From Macrostomum lignano (taxonomy: Eukaryota), in the NCBI GenBank assembly GCA_002269645.1, contig NIVC01000085.1, positions 992,001-1,056,000 of the forward strand: 64,000 nt of DNA, written 5' to 3'. A program made the position numbers and the translations under genes. Shown here in pieces: positions 1 to 22,727 of this stretch; the first letter of the stretch is position 1, and the number at the start of each line of letters is the position of its first letter. Under the pieces are notes generated by a model. That model did not search any database. It was not told the DNA's origin and saw only the letters and a program-made list of their open reading frames with translations.

Positions 1-260
1 ATCGGCCTTCGGAGCGCTTCAGAGTAAATGCATTTCTAATCTGCTTGTCGCATTTATTGCTCTCCGGTTGCCTTGGAAACGAATTTTTTCTCTCCATTTT
101 GTTTAAATCTCTGCTTGCCTTGATTAGAGATTGGCTGTGCGAATAAAATTCAATTTAGAGACAGAAGATGGTGATGGAAAGGTGCAGAGCCGTTTCGTTG
201 TGCAGATGAGGAGCTGCACAAGTTTCACAACGTTCGCAAGCGAGTGCACTAGATGCCAAG

Positions 261-1849
261 ATGCGCCCGATTCCCTCGACCGACGAGAATCTGAAAAAGC
301 GGGTTGAGCAAACTATGAAGCTCCCCCTCTTCAGACCCGTCCCTCCGGGCGTTGAACCACACATGGGCCACCCCCTGGAGGCCCCTTTCTCTGTCACGGA
401 CACCCTCTGGCAGCTGGACCACCTAAAAGTGGACAGTGCTCCGGGCCTGGACAAAGTTCCGAACTGCGTCCTTAAGCATGGCCTAGAGCCCATTGCGGTT
501 ACCCGCATCACCAAACTTTTCAATGATTGCTATCGCACGGGGATCTTCCCATTGCAGTGGAAAAAAGCAGTGGTGACGATGATTCCCAAACTGGACAAAC
601 CTCCTGAATCCCCAGGTTCCTATCGGCCCATCAGCCTAACTTCCTGCCTCGGAAAGGTATTCGAGAAGCTATTGGTGAGGAGGCTGATGAAACATCTTGA
701 GGGCCAGGGTATCCTCGGTGCGGATCAGTGTGCATACCGGAAGGTACATTCAACCTACTACAATCTTGTCCGCCTCGTGCAAGACGTCCAGGTGGGCAAG
801 GCTAAACTCTAAAGATTGTTGGCCATACTCCTTGATGTTCAAGCGGCGTTCGACTCGGTATGGTATGAATTCCTGCGGTTTAGAATGCATGAATTCGACA
901 CGCCGGATGCCCTCGTCAGGATTTGCTCTGACTATCTAGCAGACAGGCAAATGCAGGTGAAGGTAAACGGGGCGCTCAGCCAGCCGTACGAGCTGCAGGC
1001 GGGTGTTCCCCAAGGTGGCATCTTCCTGTTCCTGCTCTTTATCAGCACCATGCCTCGGCCGCAACAGCCAAACCTTAAACGCAGCCAATTCGCCGACGAT
1101 ATGGCCATCTGGGCCTCGGCGGACACTTTTGCTGGCCTCAAGACGCTCCTGCAACCCTACCTCGACCGAGTGTGGAACTGGTGTGGGGGCAGGGGATTAA
1201 GATCAATGCCAGCAAGAGTCAGGTGATCGCATTCAATTATAAGCCAACTAGTAGGCTCGACCTTCGCCCCAAGCTGAAACTTGGTGGCACGAGCCTTGAA
1301 TACCAGGACGAAGTCCGGATCCTTGATGTGAACCTGGACTACAGGCTGACCCTAAACTCACATATTGAAAGAGTAGTCAGCCACGGCCGAGCGCTTGCTC
1401 TGTCAATTAACCGCATTGCTAAGCTGACCCGACTGAGTAGCACTACCCTAAAAATGCTTTATAGAGCTTATGTTGAGAGTGCGCTGACATACGGTGCCCC
1501 GGTCCTGAACAACATAGTACCCAGCAACCTCAACAAGCTCCAGAAAATCCAAAATTTAGCTCTTAGGATCTGCTTCGGTGCCCCTAGTTACACCCAAGTG
1601 TACTACCTGCATGAGCTGGTGGCCATGCCCATGATGGCGGACAGGATCCGAGCCCTGGGTGTAGGCTGGCTCTCCAAAATAAAGGCTGCTGGGCACCACG
1701 ACTTCCATATTGAGCCGAAGCTCCCTAGAGCTGCCCGTAATCGCCCCCCCCCAGTTCTGAACCTGCTTTGGGACAGCCTAAAGAGGAGGCACTCCAACAG
1801 ACAAACAGCTGCAAATTCGGCGGCCCGTGCGGCCCATAACCCGCCCTAA
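261..1849 (+). mobile_element. Decayed, 5'-truncated non-LTR retrotransposon (I/Jockey-like) ORF2 reverse transcriptase fragment
   Basis: RT motifs in order across three ORF pieces: SAPGLD, YRPISLTSCLGKVFEKLL, LLDVQAAFDSVW, AGVPQG, QFADD, INASKSQ, LQKIQNLALRICFGAPSYT. Lesions: in-frame TAA at 810-812, damaged QG motif region, frameshift near 1200. Confidence 0.92.
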
Positions 1850-1889
1850 ATTTCAAAAACCTGAAATCATTGCTTCTCTTCTTCACATC

Positions 1890-4744: not shown

Positions 4745-6189
4745 TCAATTTTGAGGACTCTGGCGGGCTTCATCAAGTCTCTTCAGCTTCTGCCTGACCC
4801 AACCGATCTTCTCCTCGTCCTGTGTCTCCATGGCGACGCGTCTCTCTTTCCCGATCATCTCCATCTGCTGCAGGCTGAGCTTCACGTGCTCATGGAAGTC
4901 GCTATAGTGAGCCAGAGTGAGCAGCTCCTCCAAGTCCGGGTCTCCAAGCAGCTCTTCAATCCAAAGACCGAATGCGATTGCAGGTGCGCGATTGCGGAGC
5001 AGCTCAGCTTGGAGACTCCAGCTCAGGCAGCGGAAGTTCACGTACAGGTGGGAGGAGAGAGGCTGCGACAGTCTGGCAGTGAACAGAGTCTGTGTGAACT
5101 CGGGAAGGAATGGAAAGCGAGGCGGAGAGTCGCAGGGGAGGCAGAACCTCCACGCCCAGTCTGAGTCTGATGGCAATTCAGTAGACCTAAATTGATCTGT
5201 TTCAATATTCTGTGGCTTCAACCCTGAATCAACCTGATACTCAACCTGATGTCTCTGCAGCTCCATCGCGAGTCTTTCAGCCTCCTCAGATTCTCCGAAC
5301 TTCAAATGCGCCATGGCGGTCATGCACAGGGCGGCGCACTTGCACCACTGCAGATGATGCAGGAGACTGAGCTGCCTCATCAGGGTGTCTCTGTCGCTCG
5401 ATTCCGACTGCAGCTCGCTCACACACTGGTGCACCACACTGTAAACGTCTGCAAACTTGTAGTACATTTTTGGAGAATACATTCCTTTCCTGATCTCCGT
5501 GACAGCAGGCGGCGCTGTCAGAGGCAGCAGAGTGAACGGGTGAAAGTAGAACTTCTCTGACTGCAGAGGTCTCACGAGTCTCCTCAGCTGCTCGGCCACT
5601 CCGCCGACGTCGCTTCTCAGCTCACAAAGTCGGTCTCGAACCCTCGCCTTTGTGTTGTCGAAGTCGCCGCCGATTCCAGCGTTCTTGAAGTAGAGCGGAG
5701 CGTCGGGCATGAAGAAGTGCGGCATGCACTCATCGGGCGAGCTGCTCGAGTCGATGAAGCTCAGCATCCTGTCGAGAGACTCCTTAAGCAGAGCGATCAG
5801 ATTGTGGGGCTGCCAAGCGTCAGTTTCAGGATCTGTGCCATGCTTCTCCAGCATAAAGAAGAGCAGAGTCTTTGCATGGTAGGTCTTGAGTCCAGGTGTG
5901 TCCAGAGTGAGCGGCAAGTGTCTCTTGAAGATGAACTTGATGAGTGTAAACAGCTGGCCCTGGACTGTGCTCAGCCGTCTCATGATGTATTTTTCTTGGA
6001 AGCTGAAGCTCACTCTGAGCTCGTTGGTCGAGCTCGGTCTGGTCGCCCGAACGAGGTGAACATCAGCACCGAATGGAAGCAGTTTTCTAATTCTGTCCTC
6101 ACAGAAACTGCTGCAGCACTGGATCGCATGGCACGTGTCCTGTGCAGGCCGCACACCGCACGCCGTGGCTGTCACTGCAGGTTGGCTGC
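4745..6189 (-). CDS. Ankyrin-cGLR (Mab-21/cGAS-like) gene, exon 5 (terminal): Mab-21 core and helical C-terminal tail
   Basis: Acceptor ctctgcag|GC at 6190/6189, phase 1 matching exon 4. Mab-21 motifs QDTCHAI, VHLVRA, LRVSFSFQEKYIM, LKTYHAKTLLFFM, CMPHFFMPDAPLY. Stop TGA at 4747-4745. Confidence 0.88.
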
Positions 6190-6760
6190 CTGCAGAGCGC
6201 AGTGAGCGGAAAATGGCTTTGTGGGGAGTGAAAAACATGGGTTGGTTTGAAACTGCAGTTTTTCGCTTGGCTGGTTGGGAATTTCAAGTTATATCATTAA
6301 GAAAAAAATATGAAAATTATTTAAGATATCGTTCGATTGAGGCCGTGTCATTTGATTGTCGACAAGTTATTATCAGGACTCAGTGCCCCGCAGCAAGGCA
6401 CCAATCAGGCAGTCAGGGCGGCTTCGGTTTATTTTGTTTGAAATTTTTCCAAGTGAGAGCAGCAGCACCTCAGCAGAGCCATGCTGCCTACCGTGGGTCA
6501 CCCAAGCACCGCTGCACCCACTCTGCTGCAATCAAAGCAGTGAATTCAAAACCCAATGGCCCGCCTCAGCCAGTCGGCATCAGAGTTTTCTTTTCAATTT
6601 CGCCTGTCGCTTGTTTCAGCACCCAAGCCGACATTCGCAGTCACGGAAGCTGCTGAAGGCCGGGCGCCACTCGGTTGCGAATTTAAAATTGAGCAAAGTT
6701 AATGGGCTTCCAGTTGCATGCGGATCTCAGCATTCTGATGATGAACCCAGCCTCACTCAC

Positions 6761-7125: not shown

Positions 7126-7355
7126 CTGGAATGATGCGAGATGCGTGTGGGTGACTTGTTCAGAGTTGGATGGACAAAACAAGCAGGAGAGGTGAGAGTG
7201 CAGCTGCTGCAGCACTCAGACTGGCATCTCAAGCAGGAGAGCTGAGAGTCCAACCCAATCTCAACTCTCCTGAGTTTCGCTGCAATTTCTGCCCCAAGCT
7301 GCCAGCCTGTCGGAAGGCGCAATGCGGCAGTGAAAGCTGAACCGGTCAGACTCAC

Positions 7356-7409: not shown

Positions 7410-7619
7410 CTGCAATGCGGGAAGGAAAGACAAGGTTTTCAGCAGTTGAGTCTGAGATTCTGATGCGGCACAAATCACTTCATTGAGTCGGAAACTCCAA
7501 TTTTTTTCACGCGTAGAGCCGAGGAGGCACAGCTTCATCAAAATACCGGCGCTTTTTCAGTTAAGAAATTCAAATAGCGGAGAGAAGGGCGGGCAGAAGC
7601 AGATGACCGACAGAAAGCA

Positions 7620-8006
7620 GGCAATGAGCCAGAGAGAGCCGTTCGCTCCTGGCAATGAGCCAGAGAGAGCCGTTTGCCCCTGGCAATGAGCCAGAGAGAG
7701 CCGTTCGCCCCTGGCAATGAGCCAGAGAGAGCCGTTCTCCCCTGGCAATGAGCCAGAGAGAGCCGTTCGCCCCTGGCAATGAGCCAGAGAGAGCCGTTCG
7801 CCCCTGGCAATGAGCCAGAGAGAGCCGTTCGCCCCTGGCAATGAGCCAGAGAGAGCCGTTCGCCCCTGGCAATGAGCCAGAGAGAGCCGTTCTCCCTGGC
7901 AATGAGTCAGAGAGAGCCGTTCGCCCCTGGCAATGAGCCAGAGAGAGCCGTTCGCCCCTCGCAATGAGCCAGAGAGAGCCGTTCGCCCCTGGCAATGAGC
8001 CAGAGA
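7620..8006. repeat. 31-bp minisatellite, ~12 copies, in intron 2 of the ankyrin-cGLR gene
   Basis: Unit GGCAATGAGCCAGAGAGAGCCGTTCGCCCCT. Confidence 0.95.
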
Positions 8007-8396
8007 AGCCACAAATTTAGCGCGGAACGGCCGGAAGGAGAAGCAAAAGACGGCAATGCAGACTCGTGAAAAATATCTTACAGCCCTGACTGCCCGGTAT
8101 AAAAAAGTGCAAATCGCGAGTATGCTCGCTAATGGAAACGATTGGACAATAAAGTGAAAAACTGGAAACTGTGATTATTTTGTTTTTTACTCAAGCATTA
8201 CATGCAAACAAAATATTTTTTCACATGAGCCCGCTTCACTCCTTCATTTTTTGCCGTTCCGCGCTGTGGGTCACTAAAATTATCGCTTGTCTCATCCGAA
8301 AATGTAAAATTCAAAAAATCTTTCTGTGTCTTTTCTGTCTTCTGCGGTAGAGAAGCACTCTTAACAGATAATAGTAAGACAAAACTCAATACCACC

Positions 8397-8434
8397 TGCG
8401 ACGCGTTTCGGCTAAAACTAGCCATCTTCAGGCA
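8397..8434 (-). ncRNA. Minimal type I hammerhead ribozyme motif (left-arm copy; sense in the cGLR pre-mRNA)
   Basis: Reverse complement reads UGC-CUGAAGA-U-GGCUA-GUUU-UAGCC-GAAA-CGCG-UC^GCA. Confidence 0.7.
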
Positions 8435-8976
8435 CTATCGAACAGAATTTATTTCAACCTATTAAATACTGTGTAGACGACAAAATCACGTATTGAAAAG
8501 ATATAAAAGGACTAAAGGATCAATGTACAGTATAGCAATGTTCATAATATTTTTTGTGGAATGACAGGACAGAGAAAAAGAGAGAGAGAGAGAGAGAGAG
8601 AGAATGAGGCGTATGCGCCCCAAATGTACTCTAGCTTAAAACACCAATAGCTGTTCACTCGCACCTCCTCCAGATAGTTGGACATTGTTGGACATAGTTG
8701 GATAGTTGAGACAAACCCACTCTCAATGTCCAACTATCTGGAGGAGGTGCGAGTGAACAGCTATTGGTGTTTTAAGCTAGAGTACATTTGGGGCGCATAC
8801 GCCTCATTCTCTCTCTCTCTCTCTCTCTCTCTTTTTCTCTGTCCTGTCATTCCACAAAAAATATTATGAACATTGCTATACTGTACATTGATCCTTTAGT
8901 CCTTTTATATCTTTTCAATACGTGATTTTGTCGTCTACACAGTATTTAATAGGTTGAAATAAATTCTGTTCGATAG

Positions 8977-9014
8977 TGCCTGAAGATGGCTAGTTTTAGC
9001 CGAAACGCGTCGCA
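8977..9014 (+). ncRNA. Minimal type I hammerhead ribozyme motif (right-arm copy)
   Basis: CTGAAGA core at 8980-8986; stem II GGCTA/TAGCC with GTTT loop; GAAA at 9002-9005; palindromic CGCG in place of stem III; GUC triplet; 3-bp stem I TGC/GCA. Confidence 0.7.
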
Positions 9015-9241
9015 AATAATATTGAGTTTTGTCTTACTATTTTCTGTCTTCTCTTTCTCTTCCTTTCTTTCTTCTTAAATTTTTCCCTTGTCCCCATGTT
9101 CGCCTCTTCTCCAAAAACCAAGCAGGCTTACATTTTATAACTGAAAAATTCTAACAAGATTTTTCTGATAAAGTTGCAGAAATGTTTCACTAAAGCACGA
9201 TGCAGTACTGAAAGGATTCGCGCAATTCTCGCCTCACTCAC

Positions 9242-9798
9242 CCCGCTCGACTGGCATCCAGCAGCCGCAGCACCTGCCGCTGCTCAAATCGCTCTGCCAC
9301 CTGCGCACACGTGAGACCCTGACCGTCTCGATGACTCGCATCCGCTCCTCTGTCCATCAGAGCCTTGACTGCTCGCACGTGACCGGCTTCGCACGCTCGT
9401 GACAGAGCAGTCCGACCCTGACTGTCTTCAGCACGCACTGACGCACCGAGATCGATGAGTTTCTCAATGAGCTCGTGATGACCTGCATCAGCTGCCAGCA
9501 TGAGAGCAGTGGCTCCAGTGCTGTCTGGCAGATCGACATGCTGTGTGCTGACTCGCTCATCATTGATCAGTGTGGCAGCAAGAGCGACGTGTCTTTGAGA
9601 TATGGAGAGACGGAGCAGCTGTGTGATGTGAGCTGGCTGCATTCGAGAGAGGGTGTCGGTGAGAGCAGAGTTCCTGCCTTCGATGGCCATTGCTGCAGTG
9701 AAGCTGAGGATGGTGCTTGATTGGAAGAGCCAGTCGGGCTCGAGGCCGAAGGAGGCAACGGCATAATCTTGAAGACGAGAGCAAGCCGCGACTGCGCA
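9242..9798 (-). CDS. Ankyrin-cGLR gene, exon 2: 3-4 ankyrin repeats
   Basis: Repeats DSTGATALMLAADAGHHELIEKLIDLGA, DSQGRTALSRACEAGHVRAVKALMDRGAD, DGQGLTCAQVA. Acceptor tgtatttccag|TGC at 9799/9798. Donor GCGGG|gtgagt at 9242/9241 overlaps the apparent TGA stop of ORF 9238..9987. Confidence 0.8.
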
Positions 9799-10204: not shown

Positions 10205-10570
10205 TTGGCTGCTGTCAGAGTGGCAGATGTGAGTCACGGCTGCTGTCAGAGTGGCAGATGTCAGTCCCGGCTGCTTTCAGAGTGGCAGATGTCAGTCACG
10301 GCTGCTGTCAGAGTGGCAGATGTCAGTCACGGCTGCTGTCAGAGTGGCAGATGTCAGTCACGGCTGCTGTCAGAGTGGCAGATGTCAGTCACGGCTGCTA
10401 TCAGAGTTGCAGATGTCAGTCACGGCTGCTGTCAGAGTGGCAGATGTCAGTCACGGCTGCTGTCAGAGTGGCAGATGTCAGTCACGGCTGTCAGAGTGGA
10501 AGATGTCAGTCACGGCTGCTGTCAGAGTGGCAGATGTCAGTCACGGCTGCTGTCAGAGTGGCAGATGTTT
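10205..10570. repeat. 31-bp minisatellite, ~12 copies
   Basis: Unit GTCACGGCTGCTGTCAGAGTGGCAGATGTCA. Confidence 0.95.
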
Positions 10571-21560: not shown

Positions 21561-21737
21561 TGTCGTAGAGGGTCATCCAGAGAATTCGAGAGAGTCGCAA
21601 AGAACCTATCTAATAGCAAACTGAACCGAATGAAAGCAAACAAGTAATCTCAAAGTCGGGTCCGACCTCAATCAAAAACCGGAGCCACCCAACAGAATTC
21701 AAATCCAGAAAAACAACGGTGACAGACTCGAACCTAC

Positions 21738-22727
21738 CAGCTCATCCAGCGATTTCAGGTCGCACTGCCATCGGGTGGGTTTTTTACGCTTGAATGCCGG
21801 CAGGGCGGTAGCGGCTGCAGGGGCCTCAGTACCGCGTCTTGAGCTCGATGAGCTCTGCTGCTTGGAAGCTGGCCTTGCCGATGATGAAGCATTCGGCTTA
21901 GCAGCAGAGACTGCCGGGCTGGCAGCTGAGGCCAGGCCAGAGTCGTTGCTGGTGCAGCTGCTGCTGCTGCTGCTGCTGCAGCTCAGCTCCTGCTCATCGA
22001 TCTCGCGCTCGAATCTCACAAGCTCCGGCACTTCAACACCGAACGTGGCGCCAGCTCTCGCCACTTCGAGCAGGCAGAGAATCACGTGACGCGTGTTCTT
22101 CCGATTGGCCAGATCCTCGGTCTCGAACAGCAGACAGTCGGGCAGGCCCAGACTGCGGCACCAGCTGATGAAGTTGGCGATGTTGTCTCTGGCCTGGAAG
22201 GTGCCCGCCTTGGCTTCAAGACGGTAGCGAGGCGCTGATGGTGGCAGCCGCAGGAGTTTCTGGCGTTGCTGCTGCTGGGCCTGCTGGCTGGAGAAGTACT
22301 CCTCGGCTGCCAGCTGCAGCTGACCAGCATGGATGCACAGCAGAGCTCCGTTGGCCAGTTCGTCAAAGAAAGACTCCACAGTGATGTCGCGATCGTAGAG
22401 GAAGTTGAGCCAGTCGGCGAGGTCCTCGGTCATGGCGTACAGGTAATCGTGACGGCTGCGGTACTGTTGAAGCCCGCCGCCGCCGCCGCGACCGAGGCCG
22501 CTGTCACCTGTTGAGGTGGTCGACGAAACTGAAGGCCGCCTGGCAGAGGCGGCAGACGAGGAGTTCATCTCGCCAAGCTGCAGTTGGCTGGACGCGGTGG
22601 CTGCTGCCGCGGTTAGCGTAGCAGTTCGCAGGAGAGTTGTCGATTGATTGGCTGCGCCGCCTGCCGGTGAGGATGACTGCGACTGACGTTCGCCTCGCTC
22701 GCGCAGGGAGAAGCGACGGTGAAGGGA
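21738..22727 (-). CDS. GAS2L: GAS2-like gene, calponin-homology (CH) domain exon
   Basis: YLYAMTEDLADWLNFLY...ELANGALLC...FQARDNIANFISWCRSLGLPDCLLFETEDL...VILCLLEVAR. Donor CTG|gtaggt at 21738, phase 0. In-frame ATG at 22568; the frame stays open upstream past an acceptor ctcccgcag|TCC at 22727. Confidence 0.9.

What the first reader, a model, noticed from the sequence alone, without database searches (positions are those of the whole stretch)
8371..9040. A 317-bp near-perfect dsRNA hairpin inside an intron of the putative nucleic-acid-sensor gene
Seen: arms 8371-8687 and 8724-9040 are reverse complements (coordinate sums equal 17411, no net indel, same AG microsatellite length) around a 36-nt spacer with short GATAGTTGGACA-like slippage duplications. 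It lies in the intron between the ankyrin exon and the NTase exons. Established: some cGLRs (e.g. Drosophila cGLR1) are activated by long dsRNA; long hairpins are ADAR and Dicer substrates; Penelope-like elements can carry inverted pseudo-LTRs. Inference: the pre-mRNA or excised intron supplies a self-made dsRNA that could prime, auto-regulate or silence the receptor gene (endo-siRNA), or change splicing of the 54-nt exon. It may equally be a recent neutral insertion.
Basis: partly seen in the sequence, partly recalled or inferred. Interest (0 to 1): 0.72.

Follow-up and report, generated by a model that had tools for sequence, protein, structure and literature searches.

The report
Inverted Penelope-like retroelement insertion in intron
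The long hairpin is real, but it is best explained as a young head-to-head double insertion of a Penelope-like retrotransposon end, with a small hammerhead-ribozyme motif in each arm, sitting in an intron of a flatworm cGAS-like gene; it is an ordinary mobile-element footprint and nothing shows it regulates the gene.

Summary
The inverted repeat exists as described. The arms are 8364-8687 and 8724-9047 (324 nt, 319/324 complementary) with a 36-nt centre. The window is Macrostomum lignano. The repeat lies in intron 1 (9241-7410, minus strand) of BOX15_Mlig000394g2, an ankyrin plus cGAS-fold gene.

Each arm carries a minimal type-I hammerhead motif near its outer end, reading outward. The motifs have the published hallmarks of Penelope-like-element (PLE) ribozymes. 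An ATG sits at the start of stem II, with the cut site 26 nt after it, as in the Anolis Poseidon element.

The insert has a perfect 13-bp target-site duplication in a CT-rich tract. It also has a one-sided 20-26-nt "tail". This is the known signature of PLE insertion with both target strands cleaved and extended.

None of the ten paralogous loci fetched, the ~250 kb of other M. lignano DNA sampled, carries the arm sequence.

The insertion is therefore recent and probably neutral. In the pre-mRNA it would fold into about 320 bp of dsRNA, which Dicer or ADAR could process. The arms share no sequence with the gene's exons. Transcription, small RNAs and any effect on the protein could not be tested.

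It is a new member of a known kind, of low to moderate interest.

The parts
8364..8687 (.). Left arm of the inverted repeat as detected (324 nt).
8724..9047 (.). Right arm of the inverted repeat as detected. Its last 8 nt overlap the right target-site duplication.
8331..8343 (+). Left copy of the 13-bp target-site duplication, TTTTCTGTCTTCT.
   Evidence: exact 13-mer on both sides, 0 of 5000 shuffles. Joining the flanks gives one continuous CT-rich tract.
9040..9052 (+). Right copy of the 13-bp target-site duplication.
8344..8723 (-). Left retroelement copy, with its sense on the minus strand (the same sense as the host gene), about 380 nt. It includes the 3' tail at its outer end. Its 5' end is most simply the 36-nt 'spacer', because the 10-nt repeat CAACTATGTC continues through it.
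   Evidence: inference for the spacer assignment
8344..8369 (-). One-sided 3' extension ('tail'), ATCTGTTAAGAGTGCTTCTCTACCGC in sense. It is present only on the left copy: 20 nt lie outside the repeat, and 26 nt if the outermost 6-7 nt of the repeat are microhomology with the target.
   Evidence: The PLE tail is described in PMC8557442, PMC3846280 and PMC11167929.
8724..9041 (+). Right retroelement copy, sense on the plus strand, without a tail. Its 3' junction shows 7/8 microhomology between element (TTATCTGT) and target (TTTTCTGT).
8971..9024 (+). Minimal type-I hammerhead motif of the right copy. The core is CUGAAGA (8980-8986), followed by an unpaired U (8987). Helix II is GGCUA/UAGCC with loop GUUU (8988-9001). 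Then come GAAA (9002-9005), the palindromic loop 3 CGCG, and U16.1-C17. The predicted cut is between 9011 and 9012. Helix I is 3 bp plus 5 bp around an internal loop.
   Evidence: Hallmarks are from PMC4209133. The Rfam hammerhead models do not score it.
8387..8440 (-). Minimal hammerhead motif of the left copy, with its core at 8431-8400 and a predicted cut between 8400 and 8399. It is in the sense of the host pre-mRNA.
8986..9041 (+). ORF stub MASFSRNASQIILSFVLL... It starts at A9-U-G10.1 of the hammerhead and stays open to the end of the copy.
   Evidence: The Poseidon element of Anolis has the same layout (PMC11167929).
8344..8425 (-). ORF stub MASFSRNASQVVLSFVLLLSVKSASLP, 27 codons, open through the tail.
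7410..9241 (-). Intron 1 of the host gene BOX15_Mlig000394g2 (1832 nt, GTGAGT...CAG). It also holds a 31-bp minisatellite at 7620-8010.

Best explanation
The hairpin is the footprint of one recent retrotransposition of a Penelope-like element (PLE), or of a short non-autonomous derivative of a PLE pseudo-LTR, into a CT-rich tract of intron 1.

Inferred mechanism. The element's endonuclease made staggered cuts 13 bp apart on the two DNA strands. Both 3' ends then primed reverse transcription of element RNA. One primed at an outer start site, which gave the left copy with its 26-nt tail. The other primed at an inner start site that shares 7/8 microhomology with the target, which gave the right copy. 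Both cDNAs ran about 320-380 nt to nearly the same 5' point and were joined head to head by template jumping. The result is two copies whose 3' ends face outward. Each copy carries the PLE pLTR/ORF junction: a minimal hammerhead ribozyme with the ORF start codon at the beginning of stem II.

Shown: the anatomy, meaning the repeat, the target-site duplication, the tail, the two outward-facing hammerhead motifs and the ATG register. Also shown: no arm sequence in any of the ten paralogous loci fetched.

Inferred: the order of events, the RNA template and the PLE enzyme.

Functionally the insertion is most likely neutral or mildly harmful. When the host gene is transcribed, the intron would fold into about 320 bp of dsRNA. 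In the sense transcript the four clustered differences are G-U wobbles. Such dsRNA is a plausible Dicer or ADAR substrate. That would be a by-product of the insertion and not a device of the gene.
For: (1) The repeat is real and unique in the window.

(2) A perfect 13-bp direct repeat flanks the insert. It was matched in 0 of 5000 shuffles. Joining the flanks gives a seamless CT-rich tract.

(3) A hammerhead descriptor hits exactly two places in 228 kb searched on both strands: one per arm, mirror-symmetric and reading outward. The strict form gave 0 hits in 40 shuffles. The relaxed form gave a mean of 0.17 hits per whole shuffled data set.

(4) The motif has features that Cervera and De la Pena list as independent hallmarks of PLE min-HHRs (PMC4209133). 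[quoted passage not shown] They also describe a short helix I in flatworm PLEs. They report 'dual min-HHRs ~100-700 bp apart on opposite strands' in Schistosoma.

(5) The ATG sits at the start of stem II, with the cut site 26 nt downstream. This is the same layout as the biochemically studied Poseidon PLE (PMC11167929). The ORF is open to the end of both copies and through the tail. This is comparable to Adineta Pen2a, where the pLTR holds 12 codons, or 22 with the tail (PMC3846280).

(6) Known PLE insertion traits match. These are an adjacent inverted 5'-truncated copy, a one-sided 30-40-bp tail and a microsatellite target bias (PMC8557442), and short TSDs of 8-10 bp in Adineta (PMC3846280). 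The PLE protein cleaves and extends both strands, and the tail equals the interval between two RT start sites (PMC11167929).

(7) None of the ten paralogous loci fetched has the arm sequence. In four of the six closest, the interval matching intron 1 is only about 120-230 bp.
Against: No reverse transcriptase or GIY-YIG ORF is attached; the longest ORF in the insert is 63 aa.

No second copy of the arm and no other hammerhead motif was found in about 310 kb of M. lignano DNA. No autonomous PLE with this pLTR could be found, because the genome itself cannot be searched with these tools.

Rfam's hammerhead covariance models do not score the motif even at E <= 10.

I wrote the descriptor after seeing the motif.

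The tail (20-26 nt) is shorter than the published 30-40 bp, and the 13-bp TSD is longer than the 8-10 bp seen in rotifer PLEs.

The near-equal length of the two copies needs an extra assumption, namely a short template RNA or a common 5' end.
Confidence: 0.77

Rival explanations
1. The intronic hairpin is a functional self-made dsRNA that primes, auto-regulates or silences the cGAS-like receptor encoded by the same gene, or that controls splicing of the 54-nt exon.
For: The hairpin is in intron 1 in the transcribed sense and folds very stably. The host protein has a cGAS-like fold with GS and DxD motifs. Some cGLRs sense dsRNA (PMC8410604, listed). In the sense transcript the four arm differences are G-U wobbles, so pairing is kept.
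Against: The arms are retroelement sequence with its own insertion scars. None of the ten paralogous loci fetched carries the arm sequence, so the trait is not conserved in the family. The arms have no similarity to any exon, so siRNAs would not hit the mRNA. An intron is nuclear and short-lived, whereas known cGLR sensing is cytosolic; this point rests on my own knowledge. The sequence match to the Mab-21 family is weak: only Mab-21_C scores, at 29 bits, and there is no PDB sequence hit to cGAS. The G-U rather than C-A outcome is a 50:50 chance for a single event.
Confidence: 0.03
2. The origin is the same (a PLE insertion), but the hairpin has been co-opted as a trans-silencer. Host-gene transcription would make a hairpin RNA that Dicer cuts into endo-siRNAs against the PLE family, as Mu killer does for MuDR in maize or hpRNA loci do in Drosophila.
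For: It is a long near-perfect hairpin inside a transcribed intron. Flatworms have Dicer-1/2 and Argonautes, M. lignano also has RdRPs, and TE-derived endo-siRNAs are reported in Schistosoma (PMC5594548). Inverted PLE structures in Adineta show small-RNA profiles that switch polarity (PMC3846280).
Against: No expression or small-RNA data could be consulted. No other family copies, which would be the targets, were found in about 310 kb. Any transcribed inverted TE pair would do this without having been selected for it.
Confidence: 0.1
3. The hairpin is not a retroelement. It would be either a local fold-back duplication made by replication template switching or break repair, or a cut-and-paste foldback/MITE DNA transposon.
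For: The arms are of equal length. Short slippage repeats lie at the turn-around. No coding capacity is present. No second copy was found.
Against: A 20-nt non-repeated segment lies between the left target-site duplication and the repeat. No TSD abuts the repeat ends, which is not how terminal-inverted-repeat transposons look. A 13-bp TSD is outside the usual 2-10 bp of DNA transposon superfamilies; this rests on my own knowledge. A local duplication would not create a TSD or place a complete hammerhead core with PLE hallmarks in the copied segment. The 3' end of the spacer has no microhomology with the point where copying would restart.
Confidence: 0.07
4. The hairpin is an assembly or library artefact, such as a palindromic long-read chimera.
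For: The source assembly, GCA_002269645.1, is to my knowledge built from PacBio long reads; missed-adapter reads are palindromic. PLE inverted structures are known to trouble assemblies (PMC8557442).
Against: Unique sequence continues on both sides of the hairpin. The centre does not match the SMRTbell adapter (score 10-11; shuffled mean 6.7, maximum 12). The arms differ by a clustered substitution. The structure has a TSD, a tail and outward-facing ribozyme motifs, which an artefact would not produce. No comparable tight palindrome occurs in about 250 kb of the same assembly.
Confidence: 0.03

Closest known systems
Penelope-like element insertions with inverted 5'-truncated copies and a one-sided 'tail' (Penelope/Poseidon, Adineta Pen2a, Naiad; PMC3846280, PMC8557442, PMC11167929)
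   Same: Head-to-head inverted copies with their 3' ends outward. A short extension on one end only. A short target-site duplication. Insertion into low-complexity DNA. A hammerhead at the pLTR/ORF junction with the ATG at stem II and the cut about 26 nt downstream.
   Different: There is no RT/GIY-YIG ORF between or beside the copies, so both copies are only about 320-380 nt. The tail is 20-26 nt and not 30-40. The TSD is 13 bp. No related autonomous element has been identified in M. lignano.
Minimal hammerhead ribozymes of metazoan PLEs (Cervera and De la Pena 2014, PMC4209133), including the 'dual min-HHRs on opposite strands' of Schistosoma mansoni
   Same: The full conserved core is present (C3-A9, G12-A14, A15.1-U16.1, C17). 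[quoted passage not shown] The two motifs lie about 580 nt apart on opposite strands.
   Different: Helix II is 5 bp, whereas the trematode families have 7-8 bp. Activity is untested. The Rfam hammerhead models do not detect it.
Non-LTR retrozymes and Sm-alpha-type hammerhead-bearing short retroposons (PMC7229834; bioRxiv 10.64898/2026.07.22.740005)
   Same: A short (about 350-nt) non-coding unit with a type-I hammerhead, probably mobilised by PLE machinery and derived from a pLTR.
   Different: Retrozymes occur as direct tandem arrays that yield circular RNAs. This locus is a single inverted pair with a TSD.
Hairpin-RNA (hpRNA) endo-siRNA loci of Drosophila, and Mu killer of maize
   Same: A long transcribed inverted repeat that would fold into perfect dsRNA.
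   Different: hpRNA arms are homologous to their target genes. Here the arms match no exon of the host gene. Small RNAs were not examined.

Membership tests
Penelope-like element (PLE) insertion | Telomerase-like RT plus GIY-YIG endonuclease ORF in the element, or demonstrable homology to one that has it | tested here: not met
   The longest ORF in the insert is 63 aa with no domain. A search with arm-encoded peptides, including the MASFSRNASQ stub, found nothing. A heavily 5'-truncated or non-autonomous copy would not carry the ORF, so this lowers proof of membership but does not affect the mechanism.
Penelope-like element (PLE) insertion | Hammerhead motif in the pseudo-LTR, with the ORF start at stem II | tested here: met
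   The motif is at 8980-9011 (+) and 8431-8400 (-). The ATG is at 8986 and the cut falls 26 nt after its A, compared with PMC11167929.
Penelope-like element (PLE) insertion | Adjacent inverted 5'-truncated copy, head to head | tested here: met
   The two copies have outward-reading hammerheads and ORF stubs. The trait is described in PMC8557442.
Penelope-like element (PLE) insertion | Optional 30-40-bp 'tail' at one end only | tested here: met
   A 20-26-nt extension is present on the left copy only. It is shorter than the published range.
Penelope-like element (PLE) insertion | Short target-site duplication | tested here: met
   A 13-bp perfect direct repeat, matched in 0 of 5000 shuffles.
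Penelope-like element (PLE) insertion | Repeated family in the genome | tested here: inconclusive
   No other copy was found in the window plus ten loci, about 310 kb. Exact 24-mers from the arm are absent from the metagenome, viral and prokaryote collections. The M. lignano genome itself could not be searched.
Hammerhead ribozyme (type I, minimal) | Conserved catalytic core C3 U4 G5 A6 N7 G8 A9 / G12 A13 A14 / A15.1-U16.1 / H17 | tested here: met
   All positions are present in both arms.
Hammerhead ribozyme (type I, minimal) | Score above the Rfam gathering threshold for a hammerhead family | tested here: not met
   No hammerhead family was listed even at E <= 10 on 121 nt. PLE min-HHRs were likewise found only with a relaxed descriptor (PMC4209133).
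Hammerhead ribozyme (type I, minimal) | Self-cleavage | not testable with these tools
   This needs in vitro transcription of monomer and tandem constructs.
Foldback / MITE DNA transposon | Terminal inverted repeats that reach the element ends, directly flanked by a TSD of fixed length | tested here: not met
   20 nt of unrepeated sequence separate the left TSD from the repeat. The bases abutting the repeat ends do not match each other.
hpRNA / endo-siRNA locus | Arms homologous to a target gene, and production of 21-23-nt small RNAs | tested here: not met
   The arms match no exon and nothing else in the window or loci apart from the AG microsatellite. Small RNAs are not testable here.
microRNA precursor (mir-2012, mir-1294, MIR408) | Score above the family gathering threshold | tested here: not met
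   Scores were 51.4, 46 and 30 bits against thresholds of 90, 90 and 64. Several unrelated families hit the same perfect stem.
cGAS-like receptor (host gene) | cGAS/Mab21 nucleotidyltransferase fold with GS and [DE]x[DE] motifs | tested here: met
   The AF2 model has pLDDT 78.7. Foldseek matches cGAS 4k9b_A at E = 4e-6, TM(target) 0.51, over 385 columns. The motifs GSYAEGW...DSDIDW are present. Pfam detects only Mab-21_C at 29 bits, and there is no PDB sequence hit.
cGAS-like receptor (host gene) | Nucleic-acid-dependent synthesis of a cyclic dinucleotide | not testable with these tools
   A biochemical assay is needed.

The most novel reading that the evidence does not exclude
The insertion may have put a roughly 320-bp perfect dsRNA into the primary transcript of a cGAS-like gene. 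That RNA, or small RNAs cut from it, might then act on the pathway. It could serve as a self-ligand that sets the tone of the encoded sensor, or as a host-driven trans-silencer of the Penelope-like family. Either would be a case of a retroelement hairpin being wired into an innate-immunity gene.
Probability: 0.04. Interest if true: 0.75.

Novelty: new member of a known kind. Interest (0 to 1): 0.25.

Why it matters
The analysis turns a striking structure into an explained one. It is a textbook-like example of the unusual Penelope-type insertion signature: both strands primed, a one-sided tail, and a hammerhead at the ORF start. The host is a flatworm model genome, and the papers I could search describe no such element in this species.

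It is useful for repeat annotation of M. lignano. It is also a natural, datable instance of the two-start-site mechanism recently shown in vitro.

For the host gene it is a marker of a young, paralogue-specific intron expansion. It would bear on immunity only if the intronic dsRNA proved to be processed and to have an effect.

Tried and rejected
- tRNA or SINE origin: ARAGORN found nothing in 8000-9400.
- Coding element: no ORF in the insert exceeds 63 aa.
- microRNA: the Rfam matches are generic perfect-stem hits below threshold.
- Rfam hammerhead models: no hit. I then used a hand-written descriptor with shuffle controls.
- Other copies via proteins: a chimeric query made of arm translations found nothing.
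- Other copies via DNA: exact 24-mers gave 0 hits in two metagenome scans, one viral scan and one prokaryote-genome scan.
- Empty site from paralogues: ten paralogous loci were fetched. Their intron 1 shares no interior sequence with this one, so they show absence but not a precise empty site.
- SMRTbell adapter at the centre: not significant.
- Conventional TIR plus TSD reading (TA, 8-bp and others): the flanks do not match.
- A PLE or transposase in the 573-nt-arm inverted repeat of L002: no ORF there.
- Literature on PLEs or cGLRs in Macrostomum: nothing specific.
Full report
**Observation.** The inverted repeat is real. The repeat finder gives arms 8364-8687 and 8724-9047 (324 nt) separated by 36 nt. 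A base-by-base check shows 5 mismatches and no indel. One mismatch is at 8369/9042. The other four are clustered at 8392, 8393, 8395 and 8396. Both arms contain an (AG)16.5 run, and a 10-nt repeat straddles the left arm's inner end and the spacer. It is the only inverted repeat of at least 60 nt within 5 kb in the window. Two other inverted repeats turned up in six other loci of the same genome, but both have kilobase-sized spacers. As RNA in the sense of the host gene it folds at -611 kcal/mol, against -174 +/- 7 for shuffles.

**Context.** The 497-aa exon at 4745-6238 (minus strand) is 100% identical to the Macrostomum lignano protein BOX15_Mlig000394g2 (P0001). The locus is contig NIVC01000085.1 of GCA_002269645.1. 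Mapping P0001 back to the window gives four minus-strand exons:
- exon 1 at 9690-9242, which holds the ankyrin repeats
- exon 2 at 7409-7356 (54 nt)
- exon 3 at 7125-~6759
- exon 4 at ~6196-4748

The intron 1 and intron 2 junctions checked are GTGAGT...AG. The hairpin therefore lies in intron 1 (9241-7410), 194 nt from the donor.

**Host protein.** By sequence it shows only ankyrin repeats and a weak Mab-21_C match of 29 bits. It has no sequence hit to cGAS in the PDB. An AlphaFold model (pLDDT 78.7) does match cGAS structures: 4k9b_A at E = 4e-6 and TM(target) 0.51. The GS...DxD nucleotidyltransferase motif is present in most paralogues. "cGAS-like" is fair at the level of fold. Whether it senses nucleic acid is unknown.

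**What the arms are.** They have no ORF above 63 aa, no tRNA and no Rfam family at threshold. The microRNA hits are generic responses to a perfect stem and fall far below their gathering scores.

Reading the outer part of each arm outward shows a complete hammerhead core. In the right copy (+ strand) it reads as follows:
- CUGAAGA at 8980-8986
- an unpaired U at 8987
- helix II GGCUA-GUUU-UAGCC at 8988-9001
- GAAA at 9002-9005
- loop 3 CGCG, then U and C, with the predicted cut between 9011 and 9012

The left copy carries the mirror image on the minus strand (8431-8400).

A descriptor scan of the window plus six loci (228 kb, both strands) found exactly these two sites. The strict form gave no hit in 40 shuffles. 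A relaxed form, requiring only the core, a helix II of at least 4 bp and UH, averaged 0.17 hits per whole shuffled data set. A slightly different descriptor, which allows the U3-A8 core variant but requires a palindromic loop 3, found no hit in any of the ten other loci.

The motif also shows features that Cervera and De la Pena list as emergent hallmarks of PLE minimal hammerheads. These were not imposed by their search. [quoted passage not shown] They also describe a short helix I in flatworm PLEs. They further report pairs of such motifs 100-700 bp apart on opposite strands in Schistosoma (PMC4209133).

The unpaired U makes an AUG (8986-8988) at the start of stem II. The cut site is 26 nt after its A. 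[quoted passage not shown] The reading frame stays open to the end of both copies and through the extra 26 nt of the left one, as MASFSRNASQVVLSFVLLLSVKSASLP. This resembles Adineta Pen2a, where the pLTR holds the first 12 codons and 22 with the tail (PMC3846280).

Against this, Rfam's hammerhead models do not score the motif. I also wrote the descriptor after seeing the motif.

**Insertion scars.** A perfect 13-mer, TTTTCTGTCTTCT, lies at 8331-8343 and at 9040-9052. It was matched in 0 of 5000 shuffles. Among window pairs at the same spacing, matches of at least 13 nt occurred in 35 of 1265, a fraction I attribute (unchecked) to the window's many tandem arrays. Removing 8344-9052 leaves one continuous CT-rich tract.

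Between the left 13-mer and the repeat lie 20 nt that have no partner on the right. In the element's sense, the left copy ends ...CTTACTATTATCTGTTAAGAGTGCTTCTCTACCGC. The right copy ends ...CTTACTATT and then runs into target sequence TTCTGT. That gives 7/8 microhomology between element and target at this junction.

This is the published PLE signature, which comprises:
- strong 5' truncation
- an inverted truncated copy adjacent to the other copy
- a bias for microsatellite targets (PMC8557442)
- TSDs of 8-10 bp in rotifers (PMC3846280)

There is also a biochemical basis. The PLE protein cleaves and extends both DNA strands, and it starts reverse transcription at two internal RNA sites whose interval equals the tail (PMC11167929).

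The 36-nt "spacer" is most simply a further 36 nt of the left copy, because the 10-nt repeat CAACTATGTC continues through it. On that reading the two cDNAs ended within 36 nt of each other and were joined end to end. This last point, and the idea that the template was a short RNA with a defined 5' end, are inference.

**Distribution.** None of the ten paralogous loci (86-30% protein identity) contains the arm. Only the AG microsatellite matches. In L003-L006, four of the six closest, the interval between the ankyrin exon and the next homologous block is about 120-230 bp; it is about 1.5 kb in L007 and was not recovered in L002, against 1.8 kb here. The interior of intron 1 has no counterpart in the six closest loci, so they show absence but do not give a base-exact empty site.

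No other copy of the element exists in about 310 kb of M. lignano DNA. This bounds the family only loosely, at fewer than several thousand copies. Exact 24-mers are absent from the metagenome, viral and prokaryote collections. A protein-level search with arm translations found nothing.

The identical TSDs and the near-identical arms indicate a young insertion that postdates divergence of the paralogues.

**Artefact.** A palindromic long-read chimera is unlikely for four reasons:
- Unique sequence continues on both sides.
- The centre is not the SMRTbell adapter.
- The arms differ by a clustered change.
- A chimera would not produce a TSD, a tail or outward-facing ribozyme motifs.

Raw reads would settle the question.

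**Function.** Nothing indicates selection for a role in the host gene. The arms share no sequence with the exons, so siRNAs from them could not target the mRNA. The feature is specific to this paralogue. The left copy's hammerhead is in the sense of the pre-mRNA, but it would be locked in the long duplex, and PLE minimal hammerheads need a second copy to act (PMC4209133).

Flatworms have Dicer-1/2 and Argonautes, M. lignano has RdRPs, and planarians have ADARs (PMC5594548; PMC8797187). Inverted PLE structures give small RNAs in rotifers (PMC3846280). Whether this intron is processed that way cannot be tested here.

**Verdict.** The regulatory or priming hypothesis is unsupported. The best explanation, at confidence about 0.77, is a recent head-to-head PLE-type retro-insertion carrying two minimal hammerhead motifs. 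It is a new member of a known kind, with interest about 0.25.

Noticed in passing
window 8392-8396 vs 9015-9019: The only internal differences between the arms are four clustered changes. In the element's sense they read A to G: CAA ATA ATA (Q I I) in the right copy and CAG GTG GTA (Q V V) in the left. They fall in the internal loop of hammerhead helix I, just after the cut site. A single event is implied. Possible causes are two slightly different template RNAs, or A-to-I hyper-editing of one template before reverse transcription. The cause is unexplained.
   Followed up: partly
window 1-1850 (+), 1888-2865: A frameshifted non-LTR (LINE-type) reverse-transcriptase fragment (RVT_1 at 29.8 bits; YRPISL and FADD motifs) is followed by a 57-bp minisatellite of about 17 units.
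   Followed up: partly
window, whole length: The density of minisatellites is extreme, with dozens of arrays of period 4-141 bp. They include a 31-bp array inside intron 1 (7620-8010) and a different 31-bp array upstream of the gene (10207-10568). The upstream array is also present upstream of the paralogues in L004 and L005.
   Followed up: no
L002 34175-37589; L004 10079-13667 and 22085-23681; L007 333-2670 and 10874-16167: The ankyrin/Mab-21 gene family is locally duplicated in tandem at several paralogous loci. In L004 and L007 a 50-bp unit matching window 7180-7252 (intron 2) is expanded into an array.
   Followed up: no
L002 15392-18159; L003 1149-3993: Two other inverted repeats have long spacers: 573-nt arms 1.6 kb apart, and 121-nt arms 2.6 kb apart. 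The L002 one has no ORF of at least 90 aa. They may be non-autonomous DNA transposons.
   Followed up: partly
window 21699-22568 (-): An exon encodes a calponin-homology domain. The neighbouring annotated gene in L001 has CH plus GAS2 domains.
   Followed up: no
window 8655-8756 (+): The tip of the hairpin scores 51 bits against Rfam mir-2012 (gathering score 90), including a UGGACAUUGUUG stretch shared with the consensus. I judge it a by-product of the perfect stem.
   Followed up: yes
protein P0014 (JGI metagenome contig, 3.2 kb): A Mab-21_C protein 52% identical to the host gene's last exon comes from an environmental metagenome. This suggests that macrostomid-like DNA is present in that sample.
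   Followed up: no
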